Source: Isurus oxyrinchus (lineage: Eukaryota). Taken from it: a DNA stretch of 64,000 nt. A program made the translations under genes and the position numbers. Under the pieces are notes generated by a model, which saw only the letters and a program-made list of their open reading frames with translations, was not told where the DNA came from and did no database searches. Below, piece after piece: positions 6,284 through 55,556 of this stretch. Within the stretch, counting starts at the first letter, position 1. Every line of letters starts with the position of its first letter. Where the stretch lies: the NCBI GenBank assembly GCA_026770705.1, contig JANJGN010000150.1, forward strand, positions 806,001 to 870,000, written 5' to 3'.

Positions 6284-6532
6284 TCAGTTTGGCTTGAATC
6301 TGATCTGTGCGTATTCCGTCTGCTCTTCCCTGTGGACAGACCCATCACCACTGGGCACCCTGAAGACTTGGGGATTGGCGTAGAGAAGGTCGTTGGGATT
6401 GTCAGGGATTCCATGTCCAGCATCGCCTCCCACTGGACCTTCAGAGAGACCCCGGGGAGCTGGGGTCTCCCCCTCACTAGTTGTGTCTCTGGTTGTTTCC
6501 CGGGGCTCAGTAATCAGCATGTTCTGTTTACC
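6284..6532 (-). CDS. Siglec-like gene A, distal terminal cytoplasmic exon (GKQN...DLLYANPQV...QTEYAQIRFKPN*)
   Basis: Acceptor tttctctgtag, phase 0, ITSM-type TEYAQI; minus-strand AATAAA at 5679-5684. Confidence 0.8.
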   Translation of the reverse strand, partial: GKQNMLITEPRETTRDTTSEGETPAPRGLSEGPVGGDAGHGIPDNPNDLLYANPQVFRVPSGDGSVHREEQTEYAQIRFKPN

Positions 6533-6676
6533 CTACAGAGAAATGGAAACAGAAGACATCCGCACATCATTTACTGGCACTGATAGGGTTAAATTATTGT
6601 GCAGCCTCGTTAGTGTCAGTCATGTCTCAGTGGGTTTAAATTTCTCTCATATCATATAAAAGTCACCACCTATGGC

Positions 6677-6975
6677 AATGCAGCACTCCCTCAATACTGA
6701 CCATCCGACAGTGCAGCACTCCCTCAGTACTGACCCTCCGACAGTGCAGCACTCCCTCAGTACTGACCCTCCGACAGTGCAGCACTCCCTCAATACTGAC
6801 CATCCGACAGTGCAGCACTCCCTCAGTACTGACCCTCCGACAGTGCAGCACTCCCTCAGTACAGACCCTCTGACAGTGCAGCACTCCCTCAGTACTGACC
6901 CTCCCACAGTGCAGCACTCCCTCAATACTGACCCTCAGACAGTGCAGCACTCCCTCAGTACTGACCCTCTGTCAG
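6677..6975. repeat. 33-bp minisatellite CAGTACTGAGGGAGTGCTGCACTGTCGGAGGGT; further arrays at ~9640-9815, 19572-19840, 20050-20480, 20690-21020, 26378-26580, 36140-36900, 43160-43510, 46008-46540, 48606-48975, 54477-54860, 62045-62340
   Basis: 11-aa periodic spurious ORFs (VQHSLSTDPPT); unit resembles part of Deu-domain SINEs. Confidence 0.95.
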
Positions 6976-7129
6976 TCCCGCACCCCCTCGGTAATGTCTC
7001 TGGCGAGTGCTGGCTTAGATTCTGCACTCAGGTGCCTGGTGTGAGGCTCAATAACATGAATCTTGTAATCAGAGAAATGATGAGAAAGAGAGAGAGAGGG
7101 AGAAAGAGAGAGGAAGGATTATGAATCTA

Positions 7130-7873
7130 TTCATGTATGTATTGTAATTGGAAATTGTCTTTTTAAACAGAGGTTTAGTCTGTGGGTGTGTGTGTGTCTG
7201 TTTTAATTGGATTGAAGCCAGCCGGTCTGGGGACTTTGATGTATAGTAGCTTTGAGATGTAAACAAAGAGGTAAAGAGGCATATTGCATTTTTAAAAGGA
7301 GGATTCAAAGCCTGGGAGTGAATTCTTAAACCACTCAATGTTGATATTATTAATAAAATTGATACTATGAAACGGGATTTATTGTTAGAAGAGATGGAGT
7401 TCAAAGGTCCTGATGATACAATGAGAATTTACATTCAAAGAGAAGCATTGGGTATAACTTGAGCAGTTTTGTGTGTGCAGAGCAGAGGCTTGTAACATCA
7501 AAGCAGCTGTAAGCCTACACCTGTCTGCAAAGGCATCAAAGTGAAAGGAACTTCATTTGGAATGTGTCAGGTGAAAATGCTTTGCTTGGAATCTGCTTAA
7601 AGTCTATGGGTTTTCTTAGAGGAGATTAGTTTGGGAATTTGTTATAAAGTTATGATAATACTAGTTTGTAGCCACGTGCATATGTTTAACTTGTGTAAAT
7701 TAATAAATGTCTCATGTAGTTTGATATAAACCCATCTCAAGAACTGATTGTCTTATTCCTGAATTTAAAGATGAATCTCAAACATTCCACTGGGAAATAT
7801 AGGTTATGACAGTTGTTTAAAGTTTCCCTCTGGGATTTTAAACAACAGCCTTTACCAGTTGCTGTGTCATAAC
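7130..7873 (+). mobile_element. Possible solo LTR (second copy ~9967-10725)
   Basis: ~750 bp, internal AATAAA, ends TGTCATAACA; the second copy starts TGACATGA; no clean TSD found. Confidence 0.35.
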
Positions 7874-8009
7874 AGAGAGACAGTGTGATACTGAACCATT
7901 GCTGACTCCACAGGTACAAATCAGTGGGTAACTGGGCAGGGAATCTGGGACATGTGTTGTCTACGCACTGAGATTGAAGCTTTGGAGTGAGTGAAAACAG
8001 CTCCTGTAC

Positions 8010-8091
8010 CTGGTGCTTCACAGAGAGTGGACTGGGGGTCAATGCAATGTCTCTGGTCCCTGAAACTCTCTCCGCCATCGCTGTCTTTCTC
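8010..8091 (-). CDS. Gene A distal 82-nt juxtamembrane exon (RKTAMAERVSGTRDIALTPSPLSVKHQ)
   Basis: ttattgcag acceptor, CAG|gtacag donor; phase 2 to 0 fits the TM and terminal exons. Confidence 0.8.
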
Positions 8092-9248
8092 CTGCAATAA
8101 CACAATATCGAACTGTGGTTATCATATAGCAGAGAGTCAGTGCAGCACAGACACAGAGCCCACTGTAACCTTACACCAACGAATGGGACTGTCTCTTTAA
8201 ACCACTTCTGCACAAAGCACAGAATCAAGAAACTTGACACCATCCAGGACAAAGCAGCCCGATTGATCCACACCCCATCCCCCACATTAAACATTCAGTC
8301 CCTCCACCATGAACACACAGTGGCAGCAGTGTGTGTACCATCTACAAGATGCACTGCAGCAACTCAGCAAGGATCCTTCAACAGCACCTTCCAAACCCAC
8401 GACCTCTACCATCTAGAAGGACAAGGGCAGCAGACACATGGGAACACCACCACCTGGAAGTTCCCCTCCAAGTCACTCACCATCCTGACTTGGAAATATA
8501 TCACCGTTCCTTCACTGTCGCTGGGTCAAAATCCTGGAGCTCTCTCTCTAACAGCACTGTGGGTGTACCTACACCACATGGACTGCAGCGGGTCAATAAG
8601 GCAGCTCACCACCACCTTCTCAAGGGCAATTAGGGATGGGCATTAACGCTGACATCACCAGTGACAGCCACATTCGATGAAAGAATTAAAAATCTCACAG
8701 TTCAATATATTTATTGTGACCCTGCTGCACACACGCCCTATCGAAGGAGCCTTTGAGGTTCCATTGTTAATTGAAGCAGATCAGAGTTACTACAACTACT
8801 TGCATTTATATAGCACCTTCAATGTAGCAAAACGTCCCAAGGCTCATGCGGGGATTGTTAGTCACATCTTCACCTGACTCTGAGGCACATGAGGAGATAT
8901 TAGGGACAGGAGACCAACAGCTGAGTCAAAAAAGTCAGTTATTAACGGGCATCTTAAAGGAGGAGCTGGAGATAGAGAATGAGAGACAGACACAGAAAGA
9001 AAGACAGAGACAGAGAGAGAGACAGAGAGACAGAGAGACAGAGAGAGACAGTGAATCTCGGTCCCCAATGGCTCAGCATCCAGTCCTCTCTGGAGAAGCA
9101 TTTCATTCCAAACCACACCAACCGCAGCCCAATCCAATCCCTTCCTCCCTCTCTCCCCCTCTCCCCCAGTGGGTTGTTTCCTGTTCCCAGGAATCTCAAT
9201 CCCTACCCGCACACCCACATCTCCTCACTCCCACTCCCCATTTCTCAT

Positions 9249-9497
9249 TCAGTTATGCTCGAACCTGATCTGTGCGTATTCCGTCTCCTCTTCCCTGTGG
9301 ACAGACCCATCACCACTGGAAACCCTCAAAACTTGGGGATTGGCGTAGAGAAGCTCGGCGGGATTGTCGGCGTTCCCATGTCCAGCATCGCCTCCCACTG
9401 GACCTTCAGAGAGACCCCGGGGAGCTGGGGTCTCCCCCTCGCTAGTTGTGTCTCTGGTTGTGTTCCGGGGCTCAGTAATCAGCACGTTCTGTTTACC
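9249..9497 (-). CDS. Gene A proximal terminal exon (GKQN...ELLYANPQV...ETEYAQIRFEHN*)
   Basis: Phase-0 acceptor, ITSM-type TEYAQI; minus-strand AATAAA at 8710-8715. Confidence 0.88.
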   Translation of the reverse strand, partial: GKQNVLITEPRNTTRDTTSEGETPAPRGLSEGPVGGDAGHGNADNPAELLYANPQVLRVSSGDGSVHREEETEYAQIRFEHN

Positions 9498-10861
9498 CTA
9501 CAGAGAAATGGAAACAGAAGACATCCTCACATCATTTACTGGCACTGATAGGGTTAAATTATTGTGCAGCCTCGCTAGTGTCGGTCGTGTCTCAGTAGGT
9601 TTAACGCTCTCTCTCATGTCATATGATAGAAACCACATGTGACAGTGCAGCAGAACTCCCTCAGTTCTGACCATCCGACAATGCAGCGCTCCCTCAGTCC
9701 TGACCCTCTGACAGTGCAGCACTCCCTCAGTACTGACCCACCAACAGTGCAGCGCTCCCTCTGTACTGATCCTCCGACAGTGCAGCACTCCCTCAGTACT
9801 GACCCTCTGTCAGTCTCGCACTCCCTCGGTTATGGCTCTGGCGAGTGCTGGTTTGGATTCTGCACTCAAGTGTCTGATCTGAGGCTCATTAACATGAACC
9901 TTGTAATCAGAGAGAGAATGAGAGAGAGAGAGAGAAAGAAAGAGAGGTAGGGATAGAGAGAGAGACTGACATGATGCGATTAATGAATATCATGTTATTG
10001 GAAATTATTTTTATTAAAATAGAGGTTTATTCTGTGGGTGTGTCTGTGTGTGTATTAATTAGATTAAAGCCAGCCAGTCTGGGTACTTTGATGTATAGTA
10101 GTTTTGAGATGTAAACAGGGAGGCAAAGAGGTAATTTGCATTTTTAAACAGCGCATTCAGTGCCTGAGAGCGAAATCTTAAACCAATCAACGTTCATATT
10201 ACTAATAAAATTGAGACAATGAAAGGGGATTTATTGTTAGAAGAGATGGAGTTCAAAGGTCCTGATGATGCAATGAGAATTTACATTCAAAGAGAAGCAC
10301 TGGGTATAACTTGAGCAGTTTTGTGTGTGCAGAGCAGAGGCTTGTAACATCAAAGCAGCTGTAAGCCTACACCTGTCTGCAAAGGAACCAAAGTGAAAGG
10401 AACCTCATTTGGAATTTGTGAGGTGAAAATGCTTTGCCTGGTGTCTGCTTAAAGTCTATGGGTTGTGTTAGAGGAGATTAGTTTGGGAATTTGTTAAAAA
10501 GCCATGGTAATACTAGCTTGTAGCCATGTGCATATGTTTAACTTGTGTTAATTAATAAATGGCTTATGTAGTTTGATATAAACCCATCTCAAGAACTGGT
10601 GGTCTTATTCCTGAATTTAAAGCTGCATCTCAAACATTCCACTGGGAAATATAGGTTATGACAGTTGTTTAAAGTTTCCCTCTGGGATTTTAAACAACAG
10701 CCTTTACCAGTTGCTGTGTCATAACAGAGAGACAGCATGATACTGAACCATTGCTGACTCCACAGGTACAAATCACTGGGTAACTGGGCAGGGAATCTGG
10801 GACTTGTGTTGTCTACACACTGAGATTGAAGCTTTGGAGTGAGTGTAAACAGCTCCTGTAC

Positions 10862-10943
10862 CTGGTGCTTCACAGAGAGTGGACTGGGGGTCAATGCAAT
10901 GTCACTGGTCCCTGAAACTCTCTCCTCCATCACTGTCTTTCTC
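10862..10943 (-). CDS. Gene A proximal 82-nt juxtamembrane exon (RKTVMEERVSGTSDIALTPSPLSVKHQ)
   Basis: Canonical AG/GT, phase 2 to 0. Confidence 0.88.
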
Positions 10944-11916
10944 CTGTAATAACACAATATCACACTGTGGTTATCATATAGCAGAGAGTCAGTGCACCAC
11001 AGATACAGAGCCCACTAAAACCTTACACCAACGACTGGACTGTCTCTTTAAATCAGTTCTATACAAATCACAGAATAAAGAAGCTTGACACCATCCAGGA
11101 CAAAGCAGCTCGATTGATCCACACCTCATCCATCACATTAAACATTTACTCCCTCCACCATGAACACACAGTGGCAGCAGTGTGTGTACCATCTACAAGA
11201 TGCACTGCAGCAACTCAGCAAGGATCCTTCAACAGCACCTTCCAAACCCACGACCTCTACCATCTAGAAGGACAAGGGCAGCAGACACATAGGAACACCA
11301 CCACCTGGAAGTTCCCCTCCAAGTCACTCACCATCCTGACTTGGAAATATATCACCGTTCCTTCACTGTCGCTGGGTTAACATCCTGGAACTCCCTCTCT
11401 AACAGCACTGTGGGTGTACCTACACCACATGGACTGCAGCGGGTCAAGAAGGCAGCTCACTACCTCCTTCTCAAGGGGCAATTAGAGATGGGCAATTAAT
11501 AGCGGCCTCACCAGTGACAGCCACATTCGATGTAAGAATTAAAAATCTCACAGCTCAGGAGGAAGCCACTCAGCCCATCGTGCCTGTGCTGGCCCTTTGA
11601 AAAAACTGTCCAATTAGTCCCAATACCCAGACTGTTCAATCGTTCCTGATGGTTATAACCACCACTCCGGTTGTGTGGAATCACAAGGTGACCTGATACA
11701 ATCCAGGAGTAATCGTGCAGAGTGAGGAATCTCTGGGTCTCGTGATCGTTTAGCTGGATACAGGACAATGAAAGGTTCTCTCCGGATCAGAGTGGACACA
11801 GGGACCACTTACAGAGAGGGACCTGGTGCTGATCCCAAGGGAAACAATCACCGACTTAAGGAAAGAACTTTGAAGTAAATATTTAAATTAAAATCAAGTT
11901 AAATCTTCAGACTTAC

Positions 11917-12013
11917 TTTCTCACACAGATGAAGATGAAGATTCCAGCCAGGAAAACACTCAACATGATCCCAGCCGTGAACAATCCTACTGTCCATTTA
12001 CTGGAGTCTCTAC
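11917..12013 (-). CDS. Gene A TM exon (RDSSKWTVGLFTAGIMLSVFLAGIFIFICVRK), uncharged
   Basis: 97 nt, ttttacag acceptor, AA|gtaagt donor, hydrophobic stretch. Confidence 0.9.
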
Positions 12014-13560: not shown

Positions 13561-13796
13561 TGTTTATTTCACCAAAAGCATTGTCAAAGAGATCGGTTTT
13601 AAGGAGCATCTAAACAGAATGTTTCAACACAGCCCAAAAACCAGGCCAGTGATCCAGAGTGATCCAGTGTGGAACTGAGATATCAGGAAATGTGTGTGTG
13701 TATGTGTGTGGGTGTCTCTGTCTGCTTGTGTGTGTATGCCTGTGTGTGTGTCTGTATGTGTGTGTGTGTGTCTCTGTGTCAAGGTGTGTGTGTGCG

Positions 13797-13926
13797 NNNN
13801 NNNNNNNNNNNNNNNNNNNNNNNNNNNNNNNNNNNNNNNNNNNNNNNNNNNNNNNNNNNNNNNNNNNNNNNNNNNNNNNNNNNNNNNNNNNNNNNNNNNN
13901 NNNNNNNNNNNNNNNNNNNNNNNNNN
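13797..13926. other. Assembly gap; others at 50353-50489, 51265-51447, 59096-59331, 60253-60428, 61653-61788, 63119-63285
   Basis: N runs, mostly next to CA/GT microsatellites. Confidence 1.
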
Positions 13927-13994: not shown

Positions 13995-14291
13995 CTTGTA
14001 CAGTTAGTACGAGGGTCCGCTCCGATGAAACAGATGGATATCTCACTCTGCAGCTGAGAGTGTGTCCGTGGTGTTTGAGTGATGGGATCAGGGTCAGAAC
14101 AGAAGTATAGGTCAGAGTGACACCATGCTGAGTTACAGTGTTTGAGACTGATCCAGGTACGTCAGTGGGAATGTCCCAGGTTAAGACAGGTGCTGCTGTT
14201 CCATTGCACGTTGTGTTGAAGGTGCAGCTCACATCCACACGCTTTCCTGCAATAATTTCAGCAGGGAATATCGTGGGTTGATCTGTGAAAT
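13995..14291 (-). CDS. Gene A C2-set Ig exon (Siglec domain 2)
   Basis: 297 nt, phase 1-1; CTFNTTCNG with the extra Cys, LTW, LSCRV. Confidence 0.92.
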
Positions 14292-15014: not shown

Positions 15015-15380
15015 CAGAAATGTGAAGCTGGGTTACAGGATAGTAGCTATATCTATTTCTGCTGTCAAATTCTATTCTGAAATAATAAGGTCCTGCATCT
15101 TCCCGTCTGATGTTGTTTATAATCAGAGAACAGTCGCCATCTTTCAGGTCTCCAGACAGCCGGGTCCGATGGTGGAACCGTGGTAACTCGTGACTGTGAT
15201 CCTTGGAGTGAAAGGCTATAGACGATGTTCCCCGTTTCTCGTTATTAAACCAGACTCCATTTCGTGGTTGGCTTTCCAAATGTGATGGATAACTGTAATG
15301 ACATGGAATCTGTACACACGAACCTTCCTGCGCTGTCACCTCTCGTGGAGTGTCACCTTTCCACTCTTGTGACAGTCCAA
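15015..15380 (-). CDS. Gene A V-set sialic-acid-binding Ig exon
   Basis: 366 nt, phase 1-1; EGSCVQIPC...GDCSLII...DAGPYYFRIE has the Siglec Cys pattern and essential Arg. Confidence 0.93.
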
Positions 15381-16680
15381 CTGGGGAGAGAAATATCAGT
15401 ATTTAACCCTGGATGTTTTTTTCGATCCACTAGACTTGATATCCACTCCCTCCATCACTGGGGCACATTGGCTGCAGTGTGGACCATCTACAGGACACAC
15501 AAGGAACTCTCCAAGGTTTCACAATGGATGGAAGAGAATCCTGGACGCAGGAGTGGACAAGTTCATTCTACATTGGCTCATGGTCCTCAGATCACTGTTT
15601 AGCCTTTTTTCAAATTATTCATTCATGGGATTTATTACCCATCCCATGTCCATCAGAGGCATTAAAGAGTCAACCACATTGCTGTGGGTTTGGAGTGACA
15701 TGTACGCCAGACTGGGTAAGGGTGGCAGATTTCCTTCCCTATAGGTGATCAGTGAACCAGGCTTTTTAATCCCATTCATCTGCTGTGATGGGATTCACAC
15801 CCAGGGCCCCAGAGCATCACCCTGGGCCTCTGGAATACTAGCCCAGTGACAATACCTCTCTGCTACTGCTTCCCCTTAGTGAAGCCAGTCTTCCACCCAA
15901 CACAGAGTCTACAAGACACACCAACTGAGATCCATTCTGTGCTGATTTACAAGACAGGACAATGGATTAGGAGCCCTCAGAACTCCCCCCATTATCACCG
16001 TCATGAATCACTAATTAGCCTAACATTCCTGTCTGCTCTTCAACACAGCTGATTGGCTAATCTGATTCAATCTGATTGCTGTTCATTCCCTCTTCAATGT
16101 TGAAGGAATCACCAATCACTCGGCCTCTAGTTATTCTCCTGCCCACAAGAGGGAACATTCTCTGTCTACCCAGTCAATCAAAACCTTTCATCTCATCCTA
16201 GTGGTGCTTGAGTATATAGTCGGGAATCCAGGGCAATGGAGCCTCAGGAGAAGAGATGGAAACCCTGTGAGGTGGAACGTCACTGAGGCCATCCGAGTTG
16301 AAGCGACTTTTGGAGAGAATTCCAAGGCAAGATCTTCGAAGTTGAAGATTGGAATCCCTCATGAGAGAAATAGAATTTCAGTGAGATTGGTTGACTGACA
16401 GTGTTCACTGATGTCCGGGTGGGTTGTTGTGAAATCCATGGGCTCTATCTTGGTTGCGTTTACAATTTAATGAGTAGTGTAGCTGTGAGACCACAGTTTG
16501 CCTGTTAATTCACATGAGCTCATATTAATCCAGAATGTTAGGGTATAAGGTGGATATTGTGAATTATTTTATCTATCTGAGCTGGTGCAGTAAATTTATT
16601 TATTTTTTGTTTAAAAGCCATGGAATCTTGTAGCTTTATTCTCTTTGCAGGCGTCTTAAATCTCAAACCTCGTCTACTTG

Positions 16681-16890
16681 AGACAGCCGGGTCCGATGGT
16701 GGAACCGTGGTGACTCGTGACTGTGATCCTTGGAGTGAAAGGCTATAGACGATGTTCCCCGTTCCTCATTATTAAACCAGACTCCACCTCGTGGTTGGTT
16801 TTCCAGACACGATGGATAACTGTAACGACACGGAATCTGTACACACGAACTTTCCTGAGCTGTCACCTTTCCACTCTTGTGACAGTCCAA
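16681..16890 (-). pseudogene. Truncated, frameshifted duplicate V-set exon in a gene A intron
   Basis: Close copy of the 5' part of 15015-15380; 17-nt deletion between GGTGACA repeats; homology stops at TRLS. Confidence 0.88.
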
Positions 16891-18713: not shown

Positions 18714-18753
18714 CTTGGAGAAGTGACAGGAGGAAGTAGGATTTCCTGATCAT
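18714..18753 (-). CDS. Gene A signal peptide exon (MIRKSYFLLSLLQ); exon extends to 18795
   Basis: CAAG|gtaata phase-1 donor; acceptor ctctttcag at 18796-18797. Confidence 0.82.
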
Positions 18754-19203
18754 TTTCCACTCCCAGATATTTCATAAGCTTCTGACTCTCAAACTCTGAA
18801 AGAGAAAGGAGTTAATGAGACCTCACCTCTTGTCCGACAGCTCTCAAGAGATCAGAACTGCTTTTGGACAATGTCTTGACAGACTAATTTGATTCTCTGT
18901 GGGATGATAGGTGCTCTGCAGAGAGTTACAAGGCTTTTAGAAAGACAAACGTTGAAGGATTTGCATTTCTATAGCACCTTTCACCACCTCAAGACGTCCC
19001 AAAGCTCATGTCTCTGCACTTCCCTCATCCCTTGAGCTAGAAAGATGTTCTGTACAACAGACTTGAGTCTCACACCCAGATCTCAATAATCAGTAGAAAT
19101 CTTTCAAAGGCATGAATCATTGGAATCTGTCTTTATAAAGTCACAACATCAACAAAGGACGGTGTTGGTGGTGGAAGTGAATTCCAATCGTTCCGTTACT
19201 TAC

Positions 19204-21965: not shown

Positions 21966-22105
21966 TCAAACAGTCTGTCGACTTCCTTTCACTGTTTGTC
22001 TCTCCCAGACACAGACTCCAGTGATAGTGATAACCACAGCCACAAGGAATATCACAGCTCGTATTCCCAGGATCAGGATCACGTGCAGAATCTCTCCTCC
22101 ACTGT
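21966..22105 (-). CDS. Gene C TM + short-tail exon with intramembrane Arg (YSGGEILHVILILGIRAVIFLVAVVITITGVCVWERQTVKGSRQTV*), activating type
   Basis: Acceptor gtgttctctag; phase 1 matches the C2 donor at 23767; Arg codon at 22061-22059; TGA at 21968-21966. Confidence 0.85.
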
Positions 22106-23766: not shown

Positions 23767-23919
23767 ATTCCACAGTAATGGTTATGAACCCCTCCACTGC
23801 TCCATGTTCATTCTCTGCCACACACTGATAGTCTCCAGTGTCCCTGGATGTAACGTGAGGAATCACCAACCACAGCTCATTGTTGGAACTTGTTCTATTC
23901 ATTTGGACATTAAGATGTC
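23767..23919 (-). pseudogene. Gene C 5'-truncated stalk C2 exon
   Basis: 3' half (NRTSSNNELW...ITVE) matches the 282-nt C2 family; donor intact, 5' half and acceptor absent. Confidence 0.85.
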
Positions 23920-24442: not shown

Positions 24443-24816
24443 CAGAAACGTGAAGCTGGGTTACAGGATACTGGCTGTAACTATTCCTGCTGTCAAACTC
24501 TATTCTGAAAAAATAAGGTCCTGCATCTTCCCGTCTGATGTTGTTTATAATCAGGGAACAGTCGCCATCTTTCAGATCTCCAGACAGCCGGGTACGATGG
24601 CGGAATCTTTGATCCCTGTGATTGTGACCCTCGGAGTGAAAGGCTATAGACCATTTAGGCTGTGGGTTCCCATCTATTCCTTTCAACCAGATTATGCACG
24701 TGATCTCCCTACGAAATTTGATAAGTAACTGTAATGACATGGAATCTGTACACATGAACCTTCCTGTGCTGTCACCTCTCGTGGAGTGTCACCTTTCCAC
24801 TCTTGTGACAGTCCAA
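24443..24816 (-). pseudogene. Gene C V-set exon with 1-nt frameshift
   Basis: 374 nt; the frame reaches TAA after ...GRSRA near 24694; the other frame continues IIWLKG...YFFRIE with Arg retained. Confidence 0.88.
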
Positions 24817-25519: not shown

Positions 25520-25580
25520 CTTGGAGAAGTGACAAGAGGAAGTAGATTTCCCGATTATTGTCCACTCCCAGATATTCCAT
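25520..25580 (-). CDS. Gene C leader exon (MEYLGVDNNREIYFLLSLLQ)
   Basis: Paralog of 18714-18795; phase-1 donor; the ATG used by gene A is ATA here. Confidence 0.6.
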
Positions 25581-28880: not shown

Positions 28881-28885
28881 CTCAT

Positions 28886-30218: not shown

Positions 30219-30335
30219 TTATAAATTCCCATAAACAGAATCCTTGGCAAATTCACAGTTTGCGTAAAGATCATCATCTGTATCAGGATTGACTCCGCGG
30301 TTAGATTTCATTTCCAGATCCTTCTCATCTTTCTT
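30219..30335 (-). CDS. Gene B terminal exon (KKDEKDLEMKSNRGVNPDTDDDLYANCEFAKDSVYGNL*)
   Basis: Acceptor tttctattacag, phase 0, two tyrosine motifs; not in the ORF track. Confidence 0.75.
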   Translation of the reverse strand, partial: KKDEKDLEMKSNRGVNPDTDDDLYANCEFAKDSVYGNL

Positions 30336-32143: not shown

Positions 32144-32248
32144 CTGATTCCTCAAAGCCCAACCACGCTCACAGTTTTCATAAACAGGACCTCGATATTC
32201 ATCAACACGGTGGTTCGATTTGATTCCTGCTTTCCCCTCACCTCTCTT
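32144..32248 (-). CDS. Gene B internal cytoplasmic exon (KRGEGKAGIKSNHRVDEYRGPVYENCERGWALRNQ)
   Basis: Homologous to the terminal exon (KSN; YENC vs YANC); CAG|gtgagt donor; the expected acceptor reads CGG. Confidence 0.55.
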
Positions 32249-32599: not shown

Positions 32600-32900
32600 G
32601 ATGTTCTGTACAACAGACTTGAGCCTCACACCCAGATCTCAATAATCAGTAGAAATCTTTCAAAGGCATCAATCATTGGAATCTGTCTTTATAAAGTCAC
32701 AACATCAACAAAGGACGGTGTTGGTGGTGGAAGTGAATTCCAATCGTTCCGTTACTTACCCAGTACCTGTCCGACTGCTCGCCTGGGGAGGAACTGCCCA
32801 CACGCTCTGCTTGGGCTGAATGACCTCTTCCTGTGCTGCTCCCTCTGTGTATTTAATGAGAAAGGGTGGATGTCTCTCTGTGAGTCAAATCAGGAATTGG
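32600..32900 (-). promoter_or_regulatory. Orphan promoter/exon-1 module inside a gene B intron
   Basis: Matches ~19040-19340; donor at 32759; TGAGTCA retained, ETS core altered to CAGGAATT. Confidence 0.55.
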
Positions 32901-33604: not shown

Positions 33605-33701
33605 TTTCTCACACACTTGAAGATGAAGAATCCACTCAGTCCAACACTCAAACAGATTCCAGCTCCAAGCAATCCTGCTTTCCATTCATTGGAATCTCGC
33701 C
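33605..33701 (-). CDS. Gene B TM exon (RDSNEWKAGLLGAGICLSVGLSGFFIFKCVRK)
   Basis: 97 nt, same phases as the gene A TM exon, AA|gtaagt donor. Confidence 0.88.
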
Positions 33702-34967: not shown

Positions 34968-35249
34968 GTTCCACAGTGATGGTTATGAATCCCTCCACTG
35001 CTCCATGTTCATTCTCTGCCACACACTGATAGTCTCCAGTGTCCCTGGATGTAACGTGAGGAATCACCAACCACAGCTCATTGTTGGAACTTGTTCTGTT
35101 CATTGGGACATTAAGATGTCGCCACGTCAGGTTAGAAGCTGGGAAGCTCTCGACAGAGCAGATTATCACTGTAGAATTCCCCTCAATTATATTGATCGAT
35201 GAAGCGTTAATCATATCAAGAGAAGTAATTGAGAGGTTCTGTGGAGCAT
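34968..35249 (-). CDS. Gene B stalk C2 exon (domain 5)
   Basis: 282 nt, phase 1-1, IICSVESFP...YQCVAEN. Confidence 0.92.
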
Positions 35250-35728: not shown

Positions 35729-36010
35729 GTTCCACAGTGATGCTTATGAACCCCTCCACTGCTCCATGTTCATTCTCTGCCACACACTGATAGTCTCCAG
35801 TGTCCCTGGATGTAACGTGAGGAATCACCAACCACAGATCATTGTTGGAACTTGTTCTGTTCATTGGGACATTAAGATGTCGCCACGTCAGGTTAGAAGC
35901 AGGGAAGCTCTCGACAGAGCAGATTATCACTGCAGAATACCCCTCAATTATATTGATCGATGAAACGTTAATCATATCAAGAGAATTAATTGAGAGATTC
36001 TGTGGTGTGT
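35729..36010 (-). CDS. Gene B stalk C2 exon (domain 4)
   Basis: 282 nt, near-identical to 34968-35249. Confidence 0.92.
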
Positions 36011-40564: not shown

Positions 40565-40822
40565 ATTCAGTGGGAATTCTAATGGGCAGAGACTGGGAAC
40601 TGCCCAGGATACTTGTTGCTTCACAGTAGTAGGAGATTTCCTCATCGAATCCATAAGGAACTGTAATAGTTTGACCAGCGAGCGCGAGATTCGTCATCTT
40701 TCCTTGGGAGATCTTAAACCAGGTGAAATTGTGGACTGCTGGATTCCCGTCACTGGAACAACTTAGAGAAATCACCTTTCCTTTTTCCAGTGTCAGCCTG
40801 ACAGACGTGTTGTGAGGAGAAT
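40565..40822 (-). CDS. Gene B C2 exon (domain 3)
   Basis: 258 nt; LSCSSDGNP, FTWFK, YYCEA (CD22/MAG-like C2). Confidence 0.9.
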
Positions 40823-41330: not shown

Positions 41331-41618
41331 ACTTTACACTCAGAGTAACGGAGCTGACCACTCGATGGCTGGTTTGAGGGTAGTCGCACGTACAGCGGAG
41401 AGTTCGTCCATGATGCTTGAACGAAGGGTTAAAGGTCAGTAGAGCGGAAACCTCACCACCGTTCTCTGTAATGTTGCTGACCGATGAAGTCAGCAATTCA
41501 CTCCAGGTTAGATTGGGGTGGTTATCAGGGCAGGTGTAGAGGCATTTACAGATGATATGTGCAGGAGTCCCCTCCTGTAAATCCTTCAGGAGCACAATAA
41601 CTGGCTTATCTGGAGCAT
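41331..41618 (-). CDS. Gene B C2 exon (domain 2)
   Basis: 288 nt; DAPDKP...CKCLYTCPDNHPNLTW...HHGRTLRCTC. Confidence 0.9.
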
Positions 41619-43642: not shown

Positions 43643-43999
43643 CAAGAACCTGGAGTTGGACTGGTTGTGTAAAAGTGTGATCTGTGTAGCCCTCCACATC
43701 CACATAAAAGTAATACACATCACTATCTTCAGCTCTGAGACTGTCAATCCTCACCGAACAATTCTTCCCTTCCAAGTCGCCGATTATTTTAGCACGTCCC
43801 ACGAATGTGGCCATCGCATAGTTGGGATCTTTGGTGTATGTGATGGTATATTTCCATCTATACCAATATTTATACCAAGCTCCGTGCAGTGCTGTGTAAG
43901 AGTGGGAAGGAAAGTCAAAGCTACACGGAATAACCACACAAGAGCTGCTGATGGCCCTCCGAGACAGCGCCTTCATAGACCATCCCTCTGACGTCACTC
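43643..43999 (-). CDS. Gene B V-set exon lacking the essential Arg
   Basis: 357 nt; SCVVIPC...NCSVRI Siglec Cys pattern; DSDVYYFYVD where YYFR is expected. Confidence 0.92.
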
Positions 44000-44819: not shown

Positions 44820-44865
44820 CTTGCAGCAAGCTGATGAAGATCAATATCAGACCGACCTCTCCCAT
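44820..44865 (-). CDS. Gene B signal peptide exon (MGEVGLILIFISLLQ)
   Basis: Phase-1 donor CAAG|gtacaa; acceptor at 44880-44881. Confidence 0.85.
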
Positions 44866-47309: not shown

Positions 47310-47580
47310 CACTAAACCGAGTCCCCCGTCTGCCCTCTCGGGCGGGTGTGAAAGATCCCACAGCCACTATTTGGAGGAAGAGCAGGGGGGAGATCTCCCC
47401 GGTGTCCTGGGACCAGTATTTATCCCTCAACCAACATCACCAAAAACAGATGCTCACATTGCTGTTTGTGGGAGCTTGCTGTGCGCTAATTGGCTGCTGC
47501 GTTTCCTACATTACAACAGTAACCACACTTCGAAAAAAGGGTGTACTCAACTGTAAAGTGTTCTGGGACATCCAGAGACC
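47310..47580 (+). mobile_element. Deu-domain SINE fragment (SacSINE1/AmnSINE1-like); inverted copy at 63745-64000
   Basis: CCCCGTCTGCCCTCTC...AAAGATCCCA...TTGCTGTTTGTGGGAGCTTGCTGTGCG...CATTACAACAGT, recognised from memory. Confidence 0.7.

Positions 47581-49178: not shown

Positions 49179-49200
<22 letters not shown>
47324..49200. repeat. Left arm of a large inverted repeat
   Basis: Reverse complement matches ~61810-64000 including unique sequence (47580-48040 vs 63287-63745). Confidence 0.92.
47628..47880 (-). promoter_or_regulatory. Candidate promoter/non-coding exon 1 of gene B (mirror copy on + at ~63445-63697)
   Basis: gtaagt donor at 47627; GGGGAAGT abutting CACGTG at 47848-47861; the gene B leader exon has an acceptor and needs an upstream exon. 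Confidence 0.35.
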
Positions 49201-49226
<26 letters not shown>

Positions 49227-49929
49227 ATGTGTAGGCACATACATGCACATTTACACACAGTCATACACGTGCAAAAACCTACACAGAAACATACACACAC
49301 TCAACTCACACACACACACTCACACGTGCACACACATACACATACACATGTACACACATTCACTTATGCACAGAAATATACACAAAGACACACGCACATT
49401 TGCGCAAACACATACACACATGCACACACAGACACATGCATGCATACTCACACAAACATACTCACATATGTAGAAACACAAACACATACACATAAACACG
49501 CGTGAGGCCCCTCTTCTCTCTCAGTGCTGCACTGGAGTCTCGGTGTCAGCTCCGATTCTGTGTTGAAGGAAGGTAAACTCCAGATCAACAAGACCCTGAA
49601 CTGGATGAGCAACCTCCTGAACAGAGAATTGTAGATTTACCCCTCAGTGCTCCATCGATCAAATACAATTCATTCCCGTAAATCCCTTGGCAAAATCCTG
49701 AGGATGTGAAAGTTTCTTTCATTCTAGGTGAACAGCACCTCTACTGGTGGGAGAATGTAACTGTAGTTTGACTGTTTACATCGGCAGTGCCCATTATAAA
49801 TTTGACAGTGGAAGTTATATGGAGGGAAGGTATCTGGAAATGCATACAGACATCAGATACAGAGAGATGATGCATGGAGTCTTGCTGTGCAATAGGTTTG
49901 CTCACATTAAACACTTGATTTGTTCTTAG

Positions 49930-50211
49930 ATGCTCCACAGAATCTCACATTTACTTCTCTTGAAATGATTAATGCTTCATCGATCAATATAATTGAGGGG
50001 AATTCTGCAGTGATAATCTGCTCTGTCGAGAGCTTCCCATCTTCTAACCTGACGTGGCGACATCTTAATGTCCCAATGAACAGAACAAGTTGCAACAATG
50101 AGCTGTGGTTGGTGATTCCTCACGTTACATTCAGGGACACTGGAGACTATCAGTGTGTGGCAGAGAATGAACATGGAGCAGTGGAGGGGTTCATAACCAT
50201 CACTGTGGAAC
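49930..50211 (+). CDS. Gene D stalk C2 exon 1
   Basis: 282 nt, AG/GT intact. Confidence 0.8.
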
Positions 50212-50975: not shown

Positions 50976-51256
50976 ACGCACCCAGAATCTCTCAATTAAT
51001 TCTCTTGATATGATTAACGCTTCATCGATCAATATAATTGAGGGGAATTCTGCAGTGATAATCTGCTCTGTCGAGAGCTTCCCAGCTTCTAACCTGACGT
51101 GGCGACATCTTAATGTCCCAATGAACAGAACAAGTTCCAACAATGAGCTGTGGTTGGTGATTCCTCACGTTACATCCAGGGACACTGGAGACTATCAGTG
51201 TGTGGCAGAGAATGAACATGGAGCAGTGGAGGGAGTCATAACCATCACTGTGGAAC
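50976..51256 (+). pseudogene. Gene D stalk C2 exon 2 with 1-nt deletion
   Basis: 281 nt; ACGCACCCAG vs ATGCTCCACAG; spliced frame stops after ~12 codons. Confidence 0.75.
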
Positions 51257-52115
51257 GTGAGTTANNNNNNNNNNNNNNNNNNNNNNNNNNNNNNNNNNNN
51301 NNNNNNNNNNNNNNNNNNNNNNNNNNNNNNNNNNNNNNNNNNNNNNNNNNNNNNNNNNNNNNNNNNNNNNNNNNNNNNNNNNNNNNNNNNNNNNNNNNNN
51401 NNNNNNNNNNNNNNNNNNNNNNNNNNNNNNNNNNNNNNNNNNNNNNNATAATTATCCACACACAGTCATACACATACAAGCACATACACAGGAAAATACA
51501 CACCCATCTCAAACACACACACACATTCTTGCCCACACATAGACACACACATGCACATACTCTCACTCATGGACAGACCTAGACACACAGACACATGCGC
51601 ATGCGCACACACAGACACATGTGTGCATACACACACAAACACACTCACATGTGCAGAAACACAAACACACAGATACACACACGTGAGTTCCCTCTCCTCT
51701 CTCAGTGCCGCACTGGAGTCTCGGTATCAGCTCCGATTCTGTGTTGAAGGAAGGTAAACTCCAGATCAACAAGACCCTGAATTGGATGAGCAACCTCCTG
51801 AACAGAGAATTGTAGATTTACCCCTCAGTGCTCCATCAATCAAATACAATTCATTGCCTGTCCAGCCCTTTGCGAAATCCTGAGGATGTGAAAGCAAGCT
51901 TCTTTCATTCTAGATGGACAACACCTCTACTGGTGGGAGAATGCAACTGCAGTGTGACAGTTTACATAGGCAGTGTCCATTAAAAATGTGGCATAAGACG
52001 TTATCCTGAGGGAAGTTACCTGGAAATGCATTCAGACATCAGATACAGAGAGATGATGCATGGAGTCTTGCTGTGCAATAGGTTTGCTCACATTAAACAC
52101 TTGATTTGTTTTTAG

Positions 52116-52397
52116 ATGCACCACAGGATCTCTCATTTACTTCGCTTAATATGATTTACGCTTCATGGATCAATATAATTGAGGGGAATTCTGCAGTGAT
52201 AATCTGCTCTGTCGAGAGCTTCCCAGCTTCTAACCTGACGTGGCGACATCTTAATGTCCCAATGAACAGAACAAGTTCCAACAATGAGCTGTGGTTGGTG
52301 ATTCCTCACGTTACATCCAGGGACACTGGAGACTATCAGTGTGTGGCAGAGAATGAACATGGAGCAGTGGAGGGGTTCATAACCATCACTGTGGAAC
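52116..52397 (+). CDS. Gene D stalk C2 exon 3
   Basis: 282 nt, AG/GT intact. Confidence 0.82.
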
Positions 52398-53207
52398 GTG
52401 AGTGTGGAGATACATTTGTTTGTTTGTTGTCTCCGTGGTCTCCGTGGAGCCATTGGGATCGTGTTGTTTTTAATCCAGTTTTCTTCAATCCTCGCTCAAC
52501 CTACGTTATCCACACACCCAATTTTTCCTCTCCCTTTCTGTTTTTGCTCTCGGTTTCTCCTTCAATGGTTGTGAGGACAAGGCTGTCAGGTCTTCGTTTC
52601 CAATCTCCGTACTTGACGACCTTTCTCTCTCTAACTGTCGTGAACAACCCTTTTAATTGCTGAACTTCTCATTCTTTAATTGATAAATATTATATATAAA
52701 TGTTACATGTTGAAATGCAACACCTGTATTCATAAATTGCTTAGAAATTACTAAACATTCAACAGCCAGTGAAGTATTATCGAAGTGAGCTCACTGTTGT
52801 AATGTAGGAAACACAGGTACTGATTTGTGCACAGCAAGATCCCGCAAACCACCGTGTGATAATGAGCTGATAGTCGATTATTTCAGTGAGGTTGGTTGTT
52901 ACATGTGTAGAGACTACATACCCTTTAGGGAGGGAAGCATGTCTCGATGTAGATGTGACTCCAGTCTCAGACACCAGCATGGTTAACTCACACCTGCCCT
53001 CTGAACTGGTCTCCCAGTTTGGGACAAACCAGTGGTTCAGGAGGAAGACCCCCCACCACCTTCTCAAGGGGAAACTAGGGATGGACAATAAATGTCAGCA
53101 TTGCCCGAGAATGAGTATTTAAACACTGAGTGAGTGTATCGCTTCTCGAGATACATCGGAGCATCATTGTAAACCTGTAGTGCAGTAATTAATGGCTGTT
53201 TTTACAG

Positions 53208-53304
53208 GTAGAGACTCCAGTAAATGGACAGTAGGATTGTTCACGGCTGGGATCATGTTGAGTGTTTTCCTGGCTGGAATCTTCATCTTCATCTGTGTGA
53301 GAAA
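53208..53304 (+). CDS. Gene D TM exon, same sequence as gene A TM
   Basis: Reverse complement of 11917-12013. Confidence 0.88.
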
Positions 53305-54181
53305 GTAAGTCTGAAGATTTAACTTGATTTTAATATAAACATTTGCTTCAATGTTCTTTCCTGAAGTCGGTGATTGTTTCCCTTGGGATCAGCACCAGGT
53401 CCCTCTCTGTAAGTGATCCCTGTGTCCACTCTGATCCGGAGAGAACCTTTCATTGTCCTGTATCCAGTAAACAATCACGAGACCCAGAGATTCCTCACTC
53501 TGCACGATTACTCCGGGATAAATATTTGCTTCAATGTTCTTTCCTTAAGTCGGTGATTGTTTCCCTTGTGTTAAGCGCTAGATGCCTCTCCGTAACTGGT
53601 CTCTTTTGTCCCTTACGATCCAGACAGTGTTTTTCATTGCCCGTTATCCAGATGAATAATAATCAGTTGCTGTGATCTGGAAGGTGCTGCCTGAAAGGGC
53701 GCTGGAAGCAGATTTAATAGGATCTTTCAAAAGGGGAATTGGATAAATACTTGAAGGGGGAACATTTGAAGGGCTATGGGGGGAAGAGCAGGGGTGGAGG
53801 GGGGGTCAAAGATATGGCGTGTCATTATAATGATATTATACCTTAGGCTTATTTATTGTACAAGAAACAAAGCACCAATGGCTCACAGGGATTGGGTGAG
53901 AATGTTAATGATTTGTTTATCAAGACTCGGCACGAGAACAGTTATACATATGGAGAAAGATTGAAGGCATCAGAGCCATGAGTGTGTGTTCTGCTCAAAG
54001 CAAAAGTCAAACTAAGATTGGATCACATGACACACTTCCATTATAGTGATGTCACGCTGATACCCCTTATTGGAACTAGAGACAGTCCAGTCGTTGGTGT
54101 AAGGTAACACTGGGCTCTGTGTCTGTGCTGCACTGACTTTCTGCTATATGATAACCACAGTGTGATATTGTGTTATTGCAG

Positions 54182-54263
54182 GAGAAAGACAGCGATGGAG
54201 GAGAGAGTTTCAGGGACCAGTGACATTGTATTGACCCCCAGTCCACTCTCTGTGAAGCACCAG
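54182..54263 (+). CDS. Gene D 82-nt juxtamembrane exon (RKTAMEERVSGTSDIVLTPSPLSVKHQ)
   Basis: Phase 2 to 0, canonical sites. Confidence 0.86.
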
Positions 54264-55307
54264 GTACAGGAGCTGTTTACACTCACTCCAAATCTTCTAT
54301 CTCAGTGTGTAGACAACACATGTCCCAGATTCCCAGCCAGGTTACCCACAGATATCTAACTGTGTAGTCAGATATGGCTCAGTATGTAGCATTGTCTCTC
54401 GCTCCCTCCCCCTCTTCCCTCCATCACTCGCTCTTTGACCAGAAACCTGAACGCAATAATGACAAGGCACCTGATGTCAGTAGTGAGGGAGTGCTGCACT
54501 GTCCTAGGGTCTGTGCTGAGGGAGTGCTGGAGTGTCAGAAGGTCAGTACTGAGGGAGTGTTGCACTGTCAGAGGGTCTGTACTGAGGGAGAGCTAGACTG
54601 TCAGAGGGTCAGTACTGAGGGAGTGCTGCGCTGTCATAGGGTCAGTACTGAGGGAGTGCTGGACTGTCGGACGGTCAGTACTGAGGGAGTGCTGCACTGT
54701 CGGAGGGTCAGTACTGAGGGAGTGCTGCACTGTCGGATGGTCAGTACTGAGGACAGTACTGAGTGAGTGCTGCACTGTCAAAGAGTCCATTTTCAAGGGG
54801 TGCTGCCCTCTTGAAGGGGCAGTTCCGAGGGAGTGCTGCACTGTCAGCAGAGAGCACTGAGAGAACATTGCAGTGTTCGAGGTGCCTCTTTCAGAATAGT
54901 TGTATAATGCTGACCATGTTTACCATCTTATCTGGTCCCATGGCCACATTTCCAACACTGTAGCAGTGTCGCCCTTCAATAAAATTCCTTCATTGGCGTG
55001 AGGTACTTTGTGTGTCTGTGTTTGTGAATAATGGGGCACAAATCTCATGATTGGGATGGTAACATAGGACTTCAAGACTCAGGTCTGCGATAGCGAGAGA
55101 GATTACATGATAAATAGAGAAAGCAAGAGAGAGAGAGAGAAAGAGACACAGAGAAAGAGATTGAAAAAAAGGAGACAGAGAAAGAGAGTGAAAAAGAGGG
55201 TTAAACCCACTGAGACATGACTGACAGTAACGAGGCTGCAGAATAACTTAACCCTATCAGTACCAGTAAATGATGTGAGGATGTCTTCTGTTTCCATTTC
55301 TCTGTAG

Positions 55308-55556
55308 GGTAAACAGAACGTGCTGATTACTGAGCCCCGGAACACAACCAGAGACACAACTAGCGAGGGGGAGACCCCAGCTCCCCGGGATCTCTCTGAA
55401 GGTCCAGTGGGAGGCGATGTTGGACATGGGAACCCCGACAAACCCGACGAGCTTTTCTATGCCAACATCAACTTTTCAAAGCTGCCCAGCGGTGACAGGA
55501 CTGTGCACAGGAGCGAGGACACGGAATACACACAGATCAGGTTCCAGAAAAACTGA
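55308..55556 (+). CDS. Gene D terminal exon with ITIM (LFYANI) and ITSM (TEYTQI)
   Basis: Phase-0 acceptor tttctctgtag; typical CD33-related Siglec tail motif pair. Confidence 0.88.
   Translation, partial: GKQNVLITEPRNTTRDTTSEGETPAPRDLSEGPVGGDVGHGNPDKPDELFYANINFSKLPSGDRTVHRSEDTEYTQIRFQKN

What the first reader, a model, noticed from the sequence alone, without database searches (positions are those of the whole stretch)
6284..55556. Paired inhibitory/activating Siglec-like receptor cluster built from shuffled exon modules in a probable shark
Seen: four gene units with compatible splice phases. A = V(Arg+)-C2-neutral TM-ITSM tail (376 aa if no exon hides in the 13.8 kb gap). C = A-like leader and V, B-like stalk C2, Arg-TM with a short tail. 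B = Arg-less V, four C2, different TM, YxN tail. D = B-like stalk C2s, A-identical TM, ITIM+ITSM tail. Each module therefore recurs with different partners. Known: mammalian SIGLEC5/14 and SIGLEC11/16 are inhibitory/activating pairs kept alike by gene conversion. Inference: a lineage-specific, mix-and-match paired-receptor system in cartilaginous fish. I cannot confirm that it is undescribed.
Basis: partly seen in the sequence, partly recalled or inferred. Interest (0 to 1): 0.9.

Follow-up and report, generated by a model that had tools for sequence, protein, structure and literature searches.

The report
Shark Siglec-type paired receptor gene cluster
This stretch of shark DNA holds a cluster of Siglec-type immune receptor genes that reuse the same exons with a 'hold back', an 'act' or a third kind of signalling end. 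Databases label such genes automatically, but I found no paper on the family, and published work says fish lack one kind of them.

Summary

- **Gene A** is intact: 376 codons, all junctions AG/GT. It matches a white-shark RefSeq model exon for exon. Its last two exons are duplicated in tandem.
- **Gene B** is intact: Arg-less V, four C2, its own TM, a three-exon YxN tail.
- **Gene C** is doubtful. Its V exon is 374 nt, so it is frameshifted in the assembly. Most read contigs carry one extra base that restores the frame. Its "stalk C2" is only half an exon, cut by a repeat. Its Arg-TM exon is intact.
- **Gene D** has three stalk C2 exons (one 1 nt short), a TM exon identical to A's, and an ITIM+ITSM tail. 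It has no leader and no V exon in the window. It is probably a fragment.

Module sharing is real. Identity between genes changes sharply from module to module. The same cassettes occur in other combinations in RefSeq models of about 15 sharks and rays. The Arg-TM cassette is conserved in two other shark orders.

All three N gaps lie in introns, so exon counts there stay uncertain.

The same scan has already noted similar clusters elsewhere in this genome. I found no paper on the family. Sugar binding and signalling are inferred.

The parts
18714..18753 (-). Gene A leader exon (MIRKSYFLLSLLQ, phase-1 donor)
   Evidence: 12/13 identical to the leaders of white shark and basking shark RefSeq models. 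GT donor.
16666..16890 (-). Decayed 5' part of a former first V exon in intron 1 of A
   Evidence: 87% nt identity to the V exon of A, with an internal deletion and truncation.
15015..15380 (-). Gene A V-set exon, 366 nt, phase 1-1, with the strand-F Arg (YYFRIEF)
   Evidence: Pfam V-set and Ig_CD22. The best-scoring PDB sequence hits are Siglecs; MAG scores E 3e-16 with its ligand Arg aligned. AF2 pLDDT 88. Every Foldseek match listed down to rank 47 is a Siglec V domain.
13995..14291 (-). Gene A C2 exon (Siglec domain-2 type, three Cys), phase 1-1
   Evidence: Pfam C2-set_2. PDB hits to domain 2 of MAG and CD33. 96% identical to the white shark model.
13797..13926 (.). Assembly gap inside the C2-to-TM intron of A
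   Evidence: The white shark model joins C2 directly to TM. A hidden stalk exon cannot be excluded.
11917..12013 (-). Gene A TM exon, uncharged membrane span, phase 1 to 2
10862..10943 (-). Gene A cytoplasmic exon 1, proximal copy, phase 2 to 0
9249..9497 (-). Gene A tail exon, proximal copy (LLYANP, TEYAQI, stop)
8010..8091 (-). Gene A cytoplasmic exon 1, distal tandem copy
   Evidence: Tandem duplication 5669-8704 against 8700-11557, blocks 79-91% identical. ORF and splice sites intact.
6284..6532 (-). Gene A tail exon, distal tandem copy (LLYANP, TEYAQI, stop)
25520..25580 (-). Gene C leader exon (MEYLGVDNNREIYFLLSLLQ)
   Evidence: An RNA-like run shows a GT..AG joint from 25520 to 24816.
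24443..24816 (-). Gene C V exon, 374 nt in the assembly (frameshift); Arg kept (YFFRIEF)
   Evidence: Read contigs show one extra base after 24696, which gives 375 nt and an open frame.
23767..23919 (-). Gene C relic: the 3' half of a stalk C2 exon, with no usable acceptor
   Evidence: A high-copy repeat abuts the break (depth table).
21966..22105 (-). Gene C TM exon with Arg in the membrane span (LILGIRAVIF), short tail and stop
   Evidence: 78-80% identical to the C-termini of S. torazame XP_072326180 and Chiloscyllium XP_072409577, with the Arg conserved.
44820..44865 (-). Gene B leader exon (MGEVGLILIFISLLQ)
   Evidence: Basking shark P0173 has a near-identical leader.
43643..43999 (-). 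Gene B V exon, 357 nt, Arg replaced by Tyr (YYFYVDV)
   Evidence: 89% identical to basking shark P0173, which also has Tyr at that position.
41331..41618 (-). Gene B C2 exon 1 (homologous to the C2 of A)
40565..40822 (-). Gene B C2 exon 2
35729..36010 (-). Gene B stalk C2 exon c (282 nt)
34968..35249 (-). Gene B stalk C2 exon d (282 nt)
33605..33701 (-). Gene B TM exon (66% aa identity to the A/D TM)
   Evidence: 97% identical to white shark XP_041037180.
32760..32844 (-). Gene B cytoplasmic exon 1, phase 2 to 0
32144..32245 (-). Gene B tail exon (VYENC), weak acceptor, possibly optional
   Evidence: Present in the Chiloscyllium model, absent from the white shark model.
30219..30335 (-). Gene B last exon (LYANC, SVYGNL, stop)
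49930..50211 (+). Unit D stalk C2 exon a
50976..51256 (+). Unit D stalk C2 exon b, 281 nt (1-nt deficit); an N gap starts 9 nt after its donor
52116..52397 (+). Unit D stalk C2 exon c
53208..53304 (+). Unit D TM exon, 97/97 nt identical to that of A
54182..54263 (+). Unit D cytoplasmic exon 1
55308..55556 (+). Unit D tail exon (LFYANI ITIM, TEYTQI ITSM, stop)
   Evidence: 88% identical to the basking shark P0004 tail.

Best explanation
The window is part of a large shark multigene family of Siglec-type receptors. Each gene is assembled from phase-compatible exon cassettes:
- a leader;
- one or two Siglec V domains;
- a Siglec-type C2;
- a variable number of near-identical stalk C2 exons;
- one of three signalling ends.

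The three signalling ends are:
1. An uncharged TM followed by a tail with ITIM and/or ITSM. This is the inhibitory type and occurs in A and D.
2. A related TM followed by a tail ending in YxN. This occurs in B, and relatives in bony fish and a turtle end the same way.
3. A TM with a buried Arg and a short tyrosine-free tail. This is the activating type, expected to signal through a separate ITAM adaptor chain, and occurs in C.

Tandem and inverted segmental duplication, unequal crossing-over and local gene conversion move cassettes between neighbouring genes. As a result A and C share a V domain but have opposite signalling ends.

In this window A and B are intact genes. C is a V-only activating gene whose integrity at this locus is uncertain. 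D is most likely a 5'-truncated copy.

Shown here: exon anatomy, Siglec fold and motifs, discordant identities, and conservation of the cassettes across species. Inferred: sialic acid binding, SHP recruitment, adaptor pairing and the exchange mechanism.
For: **Siglec identity**
- The V of A gives PDB sequence hits in which the best 17 sequences are all Siglecs. MAG scores E 3e-16, and its ligand Arg aligns with the Arg of A.
- The AF2 model (pLDDT 88) matches only Siglec V domains among the Foldseek matches listed down to rank 47, with TM-scores 0.80-0.89.
- Across 22 relatives the three Cys of the Siglec pattern are conserved (two invariant, one in at least 90% of rows), and the Arg is conserved in at least 90%.

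**Gene models**
- A reads as 376 codons with all junctions AG/GT. It matches white shark XP_041037177 (377 aa) exon for exon.
- The B ectodomain is open and in phase. Its tail exons match white shark and Chiloscyllium models.

**Discordant identity between modules**
- A against C: flanking introns 93%, V framework 93-98%, then no homology downstream.
- A against D: TM block 96.7% (exon 97/97), cytoplasmic exon 1 block 91.9%, tail block 87.6% (Fisher p = 9e-8), and no shared ectodomain.
- Stalk exons of B, C and D: 94-98%. B TM against A/D TM: only 76% nt.

**The same cassettes elsewhere**
- RefSeq models show V-V-TM(A/D type), V-C2-TM(B type), V-C2-four stalks-TM(C type), V-V-two stalks-TM(C type), and a model with eight stalk matches.
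- The Arg of the C-type TM is conserved in Scyliorhinus and Chiloscyllium.

**Selection and expression**
- dN/dS for the V of A against the V of C, outside the divergent patch, is 0.17.
- An RNA-like run shows the GT..AG joint from the C-type leader to the V exon.
Against: - No binding, signalling or adaptor data exist.
- RNA evidence is one joint with 25 nt on its shorter side, in a run whose RNA label is a guess. At 90% likeness it could come from a paralogue.
- C has a frameshift in the assembly and a dead stalk exon.
- D has no leader or V, carries a 1-nt deficit, and its comparisons give dN/dS near 1.
- The AU test rejects monophyly of V domains that carry the C-type TM for only one of two groupings (p = 0.003 and 0.079). 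Those groups were named after I had seen the tree.
- The V tree is poorly resolved.
- The A join across the N gap rests on scaffolding plus the homologous model.
Confidence: 0.8

Rival explanations
1. Only A and B are working genes. C and D are decaying by-products of duplication, so this locus holds no working inhibitory/activating pair, even though the family has such pairs elsewhere.
For: - C's V exon is frameshifted in the assembly. One low-depth RNA-like contig also lacks the extra base.
- C's stalk exon is cut in half by a high-copy repeat.
- D lacks a leader and a V and has a 1-nt deficit in stalk b.
- dN/dS is 0.7-1.6 for stalk pairs that involve D and 0.8-1.1 for the D tail.
Against: - The only contig of DNA run X1 over the site has the extra base that restores C's frame, and so do most contigs of X7 and X8.
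- The V framework of C gives dN/dS 0.17 against A.
- The C TM exon is intact and 78-80% identical to models from other orders.
- A V-only ectodomain occurs in a sawfish model.
- The D tail keeps both motifs and is 88% identical to a basking shark tail.
Confidence: 0.35
2. The mosaics are assembly artefacts: misjoined haplotypes or collapsed or misoriented repeat copies.
For: - There are seven N gaps in the window, three of them inside the finding.
- D's stalk array is interrupted by two gaps.
- Two exons have single-base deficits.
- An inverted repeat brackets D.
Against: - The mosaic joints of C (V to half stalk to TM, 24816-21966) and of D (stalk c to TM, 52397-53208) lie in gap-free sequence.
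- B and D stalk a sit head-to-head on one gap-free stretch.
- Paralogue divergence of 3-12% is far above what two haplotypes would show.
- Independent assemblies of other species show the same kinds of mosaic.
Confidence: 0.05
3. The proteins have the Siglec fold but do not act as sialic acid receptors. They bind protein or other ligands.
For: - B has Tyr in place of the ligand Arg, and so does its basking shark counterpart.
- A and C differ sharply (63% nt) in the middle of the V exon. By alignment to MAG and from memory, this region includes the C-C' loop.
- No binding data exist.
Against: - The Arg is conserved in at least 90% of 22 relatives, including gar and gobies.
- The Cys pattern and the fold are those of sugar-binding Siglecs.
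Confidence: 0.2

Closest known systems
Mammalian CD33-related Siglecs, including the paired receptors Siglec-5/14 and Siglec-11/16
   Same: - N-terminal Siglec V domain with the strand-F Arg, followed by a Siglec-type C2.
- Tail with a membrane-proximal ITIM and a distal TxYxx[IV] motif. D has LFYANI and TEYTQI; human Siglec-5 has LHYASL and TEYSEI (PMC2722167).
- An activating partner with a charged TM residue and a short tail.
- Shared ectodomain exons between partners of opposite sign.
   Different: - Orthology is not shown. PDB sequence scores rank MAG and sialoadhesin at or above Siglec-5, Siglec-8 and CD33.
- The partners differ in a central patch of the V exon instead of being near-identical.
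- There is a third, YxN-type signalling end.
- Tandem V-V forms occur, and the stalk exon varies in copy number.
- The host is a shark, whereas published work states that fish genomes lack CD33-related Siglecs (PMC7226832, which covers teleosts).
RefSeq gene models in sharks and rays named Siglec-8/10/11/12/13/14/15, CD33-like or MAG-like (for example white shark XP_041037177 and XP_041037180, basking shark XP_078389734, S. torazame XP_072326180, Chiloscyllium XP_072409577)
   Same: Same family and same cassettes. White shark XP_041037177 has the exon order of gene A at 83-96% identity per exon.
   Different: - These are automatic predictions with arbitrary mammalian names. I found no paper that analyses them.
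- The combinations in this window differ from those models: B's Arg-less V with four C2, C's V-only form, and D.
MAG (Siglec-4), CD22 and the 'MAG-like' or 'CD22-like' genes of bony fish
   Same: - MAG is the best PDB sequence match for both the A and B V domains.
- Relatives in gar, goby, catfish, arapaima and a turtle end in YxN[VM], like the tail of B.
   Different: - V identity to those genes is only 35-44%.
- None of those I inspected has the ITIM plus TEY tail or the Arg-TM cassette.

Membership tests
Siglec family (I-type lectins) | N-terminal V-set domain with the Siglec fold | tested here: met
   - Pfam V-set and Ig_CD22.
- The best-scoring PDB sequence hits are Siglecs.
- The AF2 model of the V of A matches only Siglec V domains among the Foldseek matches listed down to rank 47.
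Siglec family (I-type lectins) | Conserved Arg on strand F that binds the sialic acid carboxylate | tested here: met
   - Met in A and C: the Arg aligns with the ligand Arg of MAG and is at least 90% conserved in relatives.
- Not met in B: Tyr occupies that position, and also in basking shark.
Siglec family (I-type lectins) | Unusual Cys pattern: a Cys-x4-Cys pair in strand B, its partner in strand E (DCSL) rather than strand F, and a third Cys in the following C2 | tested here: met
   - The sequence pattern is present in A, B and C.
- Of the three V-domain Cys, two are invariant and one is at least 90% conserved.
- The C2 of A has three Cys.
- The bonds themselves were not shown.
Siglec family (I-type lectins) | Binding of sialylated glycans | not testable with these tools
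   This needs a glycan array or cell binding with V-Fc and an Arg mutant.
CD33-related Siglec subgroup | Tail with a proximal ITIM and a distal ITIM-like/ITSM motif | tested here: met
   - D has LFYANI plus TEYTQI.
- A has only TEYAQI, because LLYANP fails the +3 rule. The white shark model has the same state.
- Motif definitions come from PMC2722167.
CD33-related Siglec subgroup | Phylogenetic grouping with mammalian CD33-related Siglecs rather than with MAG, sialoadhesin or CD22 | tested here: inconclusive
   - PDB scores: MAG 62.7, sialoadhesin 58.8, Siglec-5 58.2, Siglec-8 56.8, CD33 54, CD22 27 bits.
- No mammalian sequences were available for a tree.
- A search with the tail exon found nothing in the allowed length range.
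CD33-related Siglec subgroup | Conserved synteny with the mammalian cluster | not tested
Paired activating immunoreceptors (coupled to DAP12 or FcR gamma) | Basic residue inside the TM plus a short tail without tyrosine | tested here: met
   C TM exon...HVILILGIRAVIFLVAVVITITGVCVW ERQTVKGSRQTV, then stop. The Arg is conserved in two other shark orders.
Paired activating immunoreceptors (coupled to DAP12 or FcR gamma) | Ectodomain closely similar to that of an inhibitory neighbour | tested here: met
   - A against C: leader block 93.7%, V framework 93-98%, flanking introns 93%, but a 120-nt central patch is only 63%.
- Integrity of the C exon at this locus is uncertain.
Paired activating immunoreceptors (coupled to DAP12 or FcR gamma) | Physical association with an ITAM adaptor | not testable with these tools
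It needs co-expression and co-precipitation.

The most novel reading that the evidence does not exclude
Siglecs with the CD33-type signalling design were already present in the common ancestor of sharks and rays, and possibly of all jawed vertebrates. That design is an ITIM plus a TEYxxI tail, paired with an Arg-TM activating partner. They would then have evolved as a combinatorial cassette system with three interchangeable signalling ends, and the reported lack of CD33-related Siglecs in fish would reflect loss in bony fish, not late origin in mammals.
Probability: 0.3. Interest if true: 0.7.

Novelty: new member of a known kind. Interest (0 to 1): 0.5.

Why it matters
Paired inhibitory and activating Siglecs are treated as a fast-evolving feature of mammals, shaped by pathogens that mimic host sialic acids. 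Published work on fish states that CD33-related inhibitory Siglecs are missing (PMC7226832). A large shark and ray family with the same logic would push that design back by hundreds of millions of years. It would also give a natural system for studying how exon cassettes are exchanged among tandem immune receptor genes. The practical lesson for this window is narrower. Only two of the four units are clearly intact, and the assembly has single-base errors and gaps exactly where the interesting mosaics lie.

Tried and rejected
- **B tail at 33040-33369.** An ORF with 'YINEN' there looked like B's tail but sits in repeat-like sequence with no splice sites. The real tail exons were found by homology.
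- **'TM' at 7.9k, 10.9k and 54.2k.** The region I first took for a TM exon is in fact cytoplasmic exon 1. The TM exons lie at 12.0k and 53.2k.
- **A/D-type tail exons downstream of B.** None found.
- **Leader or V exon for D on the + strand.** None found.
- **The search for homologous proteins with the D tail exon.** No candidate in the allowed length range, which says nothing about longer relatives.
- **V-domain tree.** Mostly unresolved. The AU test was mixed.
- **Literature.** Searches for Siglec with shark, cartilaginous fish or elasmobranch found no description of this family.
- **Not done.** Complex prediction was not used because no adaptor sequence was available. I only computed their length, phase and stop count in a script, without printing them. 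I did not fill or look up the N gaps.

Full report
**Source and layout**

The window is vertebrate DNA rich in LINE and SINE copies and in a 33-nt satellite. It has seven N gaps. The closest annotated proteins are from sharks, best of all white shark and basking shark. The 'probable shark' call is therefore right. The V exons lie at 15.0-15.4k, 24.4-24.8k and 43.6-44.0k, with a fragment at 16.7-16.9k, all on the minus strand. C2 exons lie at 14.0-14.3k, 41.3-41.6k and 40.6-40.8k. A near-identical 'stalk' C2 exon occurs at 35.7-36.0k and 35.0-35.2k on the minus strand, and at 49.9-50.2k, 51.0-51.3k and 52.1-52.4k on the plus strand. A half copy lies at 23.8-23.9k.

**Siglec identity**

The V domain of A gives PDB sequence hits in which the best 17 distinct sequences are all Siglecs. 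The ligand-binding Arg of MAG aligns with the Arg of YYFRIEF. The B V domain behaves the same way but has Tyr at that position. In an alignment with 21 relatives, two of the three Cys of the Siglec pattern are invariant, the third is at least 90% conserved, and the Arg is at least 90% conserved. An AlphaFold model of the A V exon reached pLDDT 88 and pTM 0.82. Every Foldseek match listed down to rank 47 is a Siglec V domain. The C2 of A matches domain 2 of MAG and CD33.

**Gene A**

- The exons are leader 18753-18714, V 15380-15015, C2 14291-13995, TM 12013-11917, cytoplasmic exon 10943-10862 and tail 9497-9249.
- Together they make 376 codons with no internal stop and AG/GT at every junction.
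- White shark XP_041037177 (377 aa, 'CD33-like') has the same exon order. Its leader matches at 12/13 residues and the other exons at 83-96% identity. It joins C2 directly to TM. The N gap at 13797-13926 is therefore intronic and no hidden exon is needed, although one cannot be excluded.
The last two exons are duplicated in tandem, and both copies are intact. A decayed V fragment lies in intron 1, which suggests a former V-V gene like those of basking shark and Mustelus.
- The tail has LLYANP, which is not an ITIM, and TEYAQI, an ITSM. The white shark model has the same state.

**Gene B**

The leader, the Arg-less V, two C2, two stalk C2 and the TM are all in phase and open. A lead from the scan's own note s1-864092, together with homology to white shark and Chiloscyllium models, located three tail exons at 32844-32760, 32245-32144 and 30335-30219. 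The tail ends in SVYGNL. Relatives in gar, goby, catfish, arapaima and a turtle also end in YxN[VM]. Basking shark P0173 has an 89% identical V with the same Tyr, so the loss of the Arg is old and the domain has been maintained.

**Gene C**

The leader block is 93.7% identical to that of A, and the V exon resembles that of A. However, the V exon is 374 nt and reads into a stop.

I laid public contigs on 21900-25700, with these results:
- The only contig of DNA run X1 over position 24696 carries one extra base there.
- Two of three contigs of run X7 carry it, and so does most of the depth in a sister species (X8).
- With that base the exon is 375 nt and open.
- One low-depth X7 contig lacks the extra base.
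- At 90% likeness, paralogues cannot be excluded as the source of any of these contigs.

I put about 60% on the exon being intact at this locus. Outside a central patch, the A and C V exons give dN/dS of 0.17. The patch itself is only 63% identical, against 93-98% around it.

The 'stalk C2' of C is only the last 153 nt of the exon. It has a stop directly upstream and no phase-1 acceptor, and it abuts a very high-copy repeat. It is a relic. Splicing from V straight to TM would be in phase.

The TM exon (22105-21966) is intact and has an Arg in the membrane span. It is 78-80% identical to the C-termini of Scyliorhinus torazame and Chiloscyllium models, which keep the Arg. Run X7 shows a GT..AG joint from 25520 to 24816, which is the predicted leader-to-V splice, with 25 nt on its shorter side. 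Runs X5 and X7 also show joints from the end of a V exon to the start of a V exon. These fit V-V transcripts of paralogues.

**Unit D**

- It has three stalk exons. One is 281 nt.
- N gaps begin 142 nt after the first stalk exon and 9 nt after the second.
- Its TM exon is identical to that of A at 97/97 nt.
- It also has a cytoplasmic exon and a tail with LFYANI and TEYTQI.
- No leader or V exon lies on the plus strand anywhere in the window.
- Comparisons that involve D give dN/dS near 1.

I read D as a 5'-truncated inverted copy. The copy number of its stalk exons is unreliable.

**Shuffling**

Identity between genes changes sharply from module to module.
- A and C share the leader and V, with introns at 93%, and nothing downstream.
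- A and D share the TM block at 96.7%, including introns, the cytoplasmic exon block at 91.9% and the tail block at 87.6%. The heterogeneity is significant (p = 9e-8). They share no ectodomain.
- The stalks of B, C and D are 94-98% alike, while the B TM is 76% identical to the A/D TM.

This excludes simple whole-gene duplication. The mosaic joints of C and D lie in gap-free sequence, and divergence of 3-12% excludes haplotype duplicates. Independent assemblies of other species show the same cassettes in other orders. In Scyliorhinus, an inhibitory-tail model and an Arg-TM model have V domains that are each other's closest relatives, position by position, with support of 100/98. The AU test on V domains that carry the Arg-TM gave p = 0.003 and 0.079 for two groupings.

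**What is known**

NCBI's pipeline names these genes as various Siglecs, CD33-like or MAG-like in about 15 elasmobranch species. I found no paper on them. One paper on teleosts states that fish genomes lack CD33-related Siglecs (PMC7226832). The ITIM and ITSM motif pair matches that of human Siglec-5 (PMC2722167), but orthology to the CD33-related group could not be tested.

The scan has already noted similar clusters on other pieces of this genome, and an earlier follow-up reached the same general reading. Those are unchecked notes, not evidence.

**Limits**

I did not send joined spliced models to any search or fold tool. I did not fill the N gaps.

Noticed in passing
32595-32905, 25844-26151, 26630-26794, 19039-19350: A block of about 310 nt holds an intact B-type cytoplasmic exon with AG and GT kept. 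It occurs four times at 90-97% identity: once inside gene B, and as orphan copies just upstream of the leaders of C and A. This suggests that the duplication units spanned gene boundaries.
   Followed up: partly
6679-6969, 9642-9827, 19572-20946, 26435-26572, 36142-36901, 43193-43510, 46024-46539, 48618-48972, 54476-54752, 62049-62335: Arrays of a 33-nt satellite lie in many introns and next to several cassette junctions, for example just 5' of B stalk c and about 1 kb 5' of D stalk a. They could serve as substrates for unequal crossing-over. I did not test this against chance.
   Followed up: no
46253-49227 versus 64000-61790: A large inverted repeat, 88-98% identical, brackets unit D and runs off the end of the window. 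It could mediate inversion of the D segment.
   Followed up: partly
24443 to 24815 (joints in runs X5 and X7): Contigs join the 3' end of a V exon to the 5' start of a V exon. This fits transcripts of V-V paralogues, such as the basking shark and Mustelus models. A back-spliced circular exon is also possible.
   Followed up: no
23932-24312: A very high-copy repeat, with contig depth about 100 times that of its neighbours, abuts the break that removed the 5' half of C's stalk exon.
   Followed up: partly
24696 and about 50984: Two Ig exons have single-base deficits in the assembly. Read contigs contradict the first one. The assembly may therefore carry indel errors, and frameshifts in it should not be taken as pseudogene evidence without reads.
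   Followed up: partly
2133-4260 (+), 37006-39253 (-), 27443-27778 (+): ORFs of LINE reverse transcriptase type and fragments of them lie between and inside the receptor genes.
   Followed up: no
13653-13796, 49137-49502, 51452-51754: TG/CA-rich microsatellites border the N gaps directly. This probably explains why the assembly broke there.
   Followed up: no
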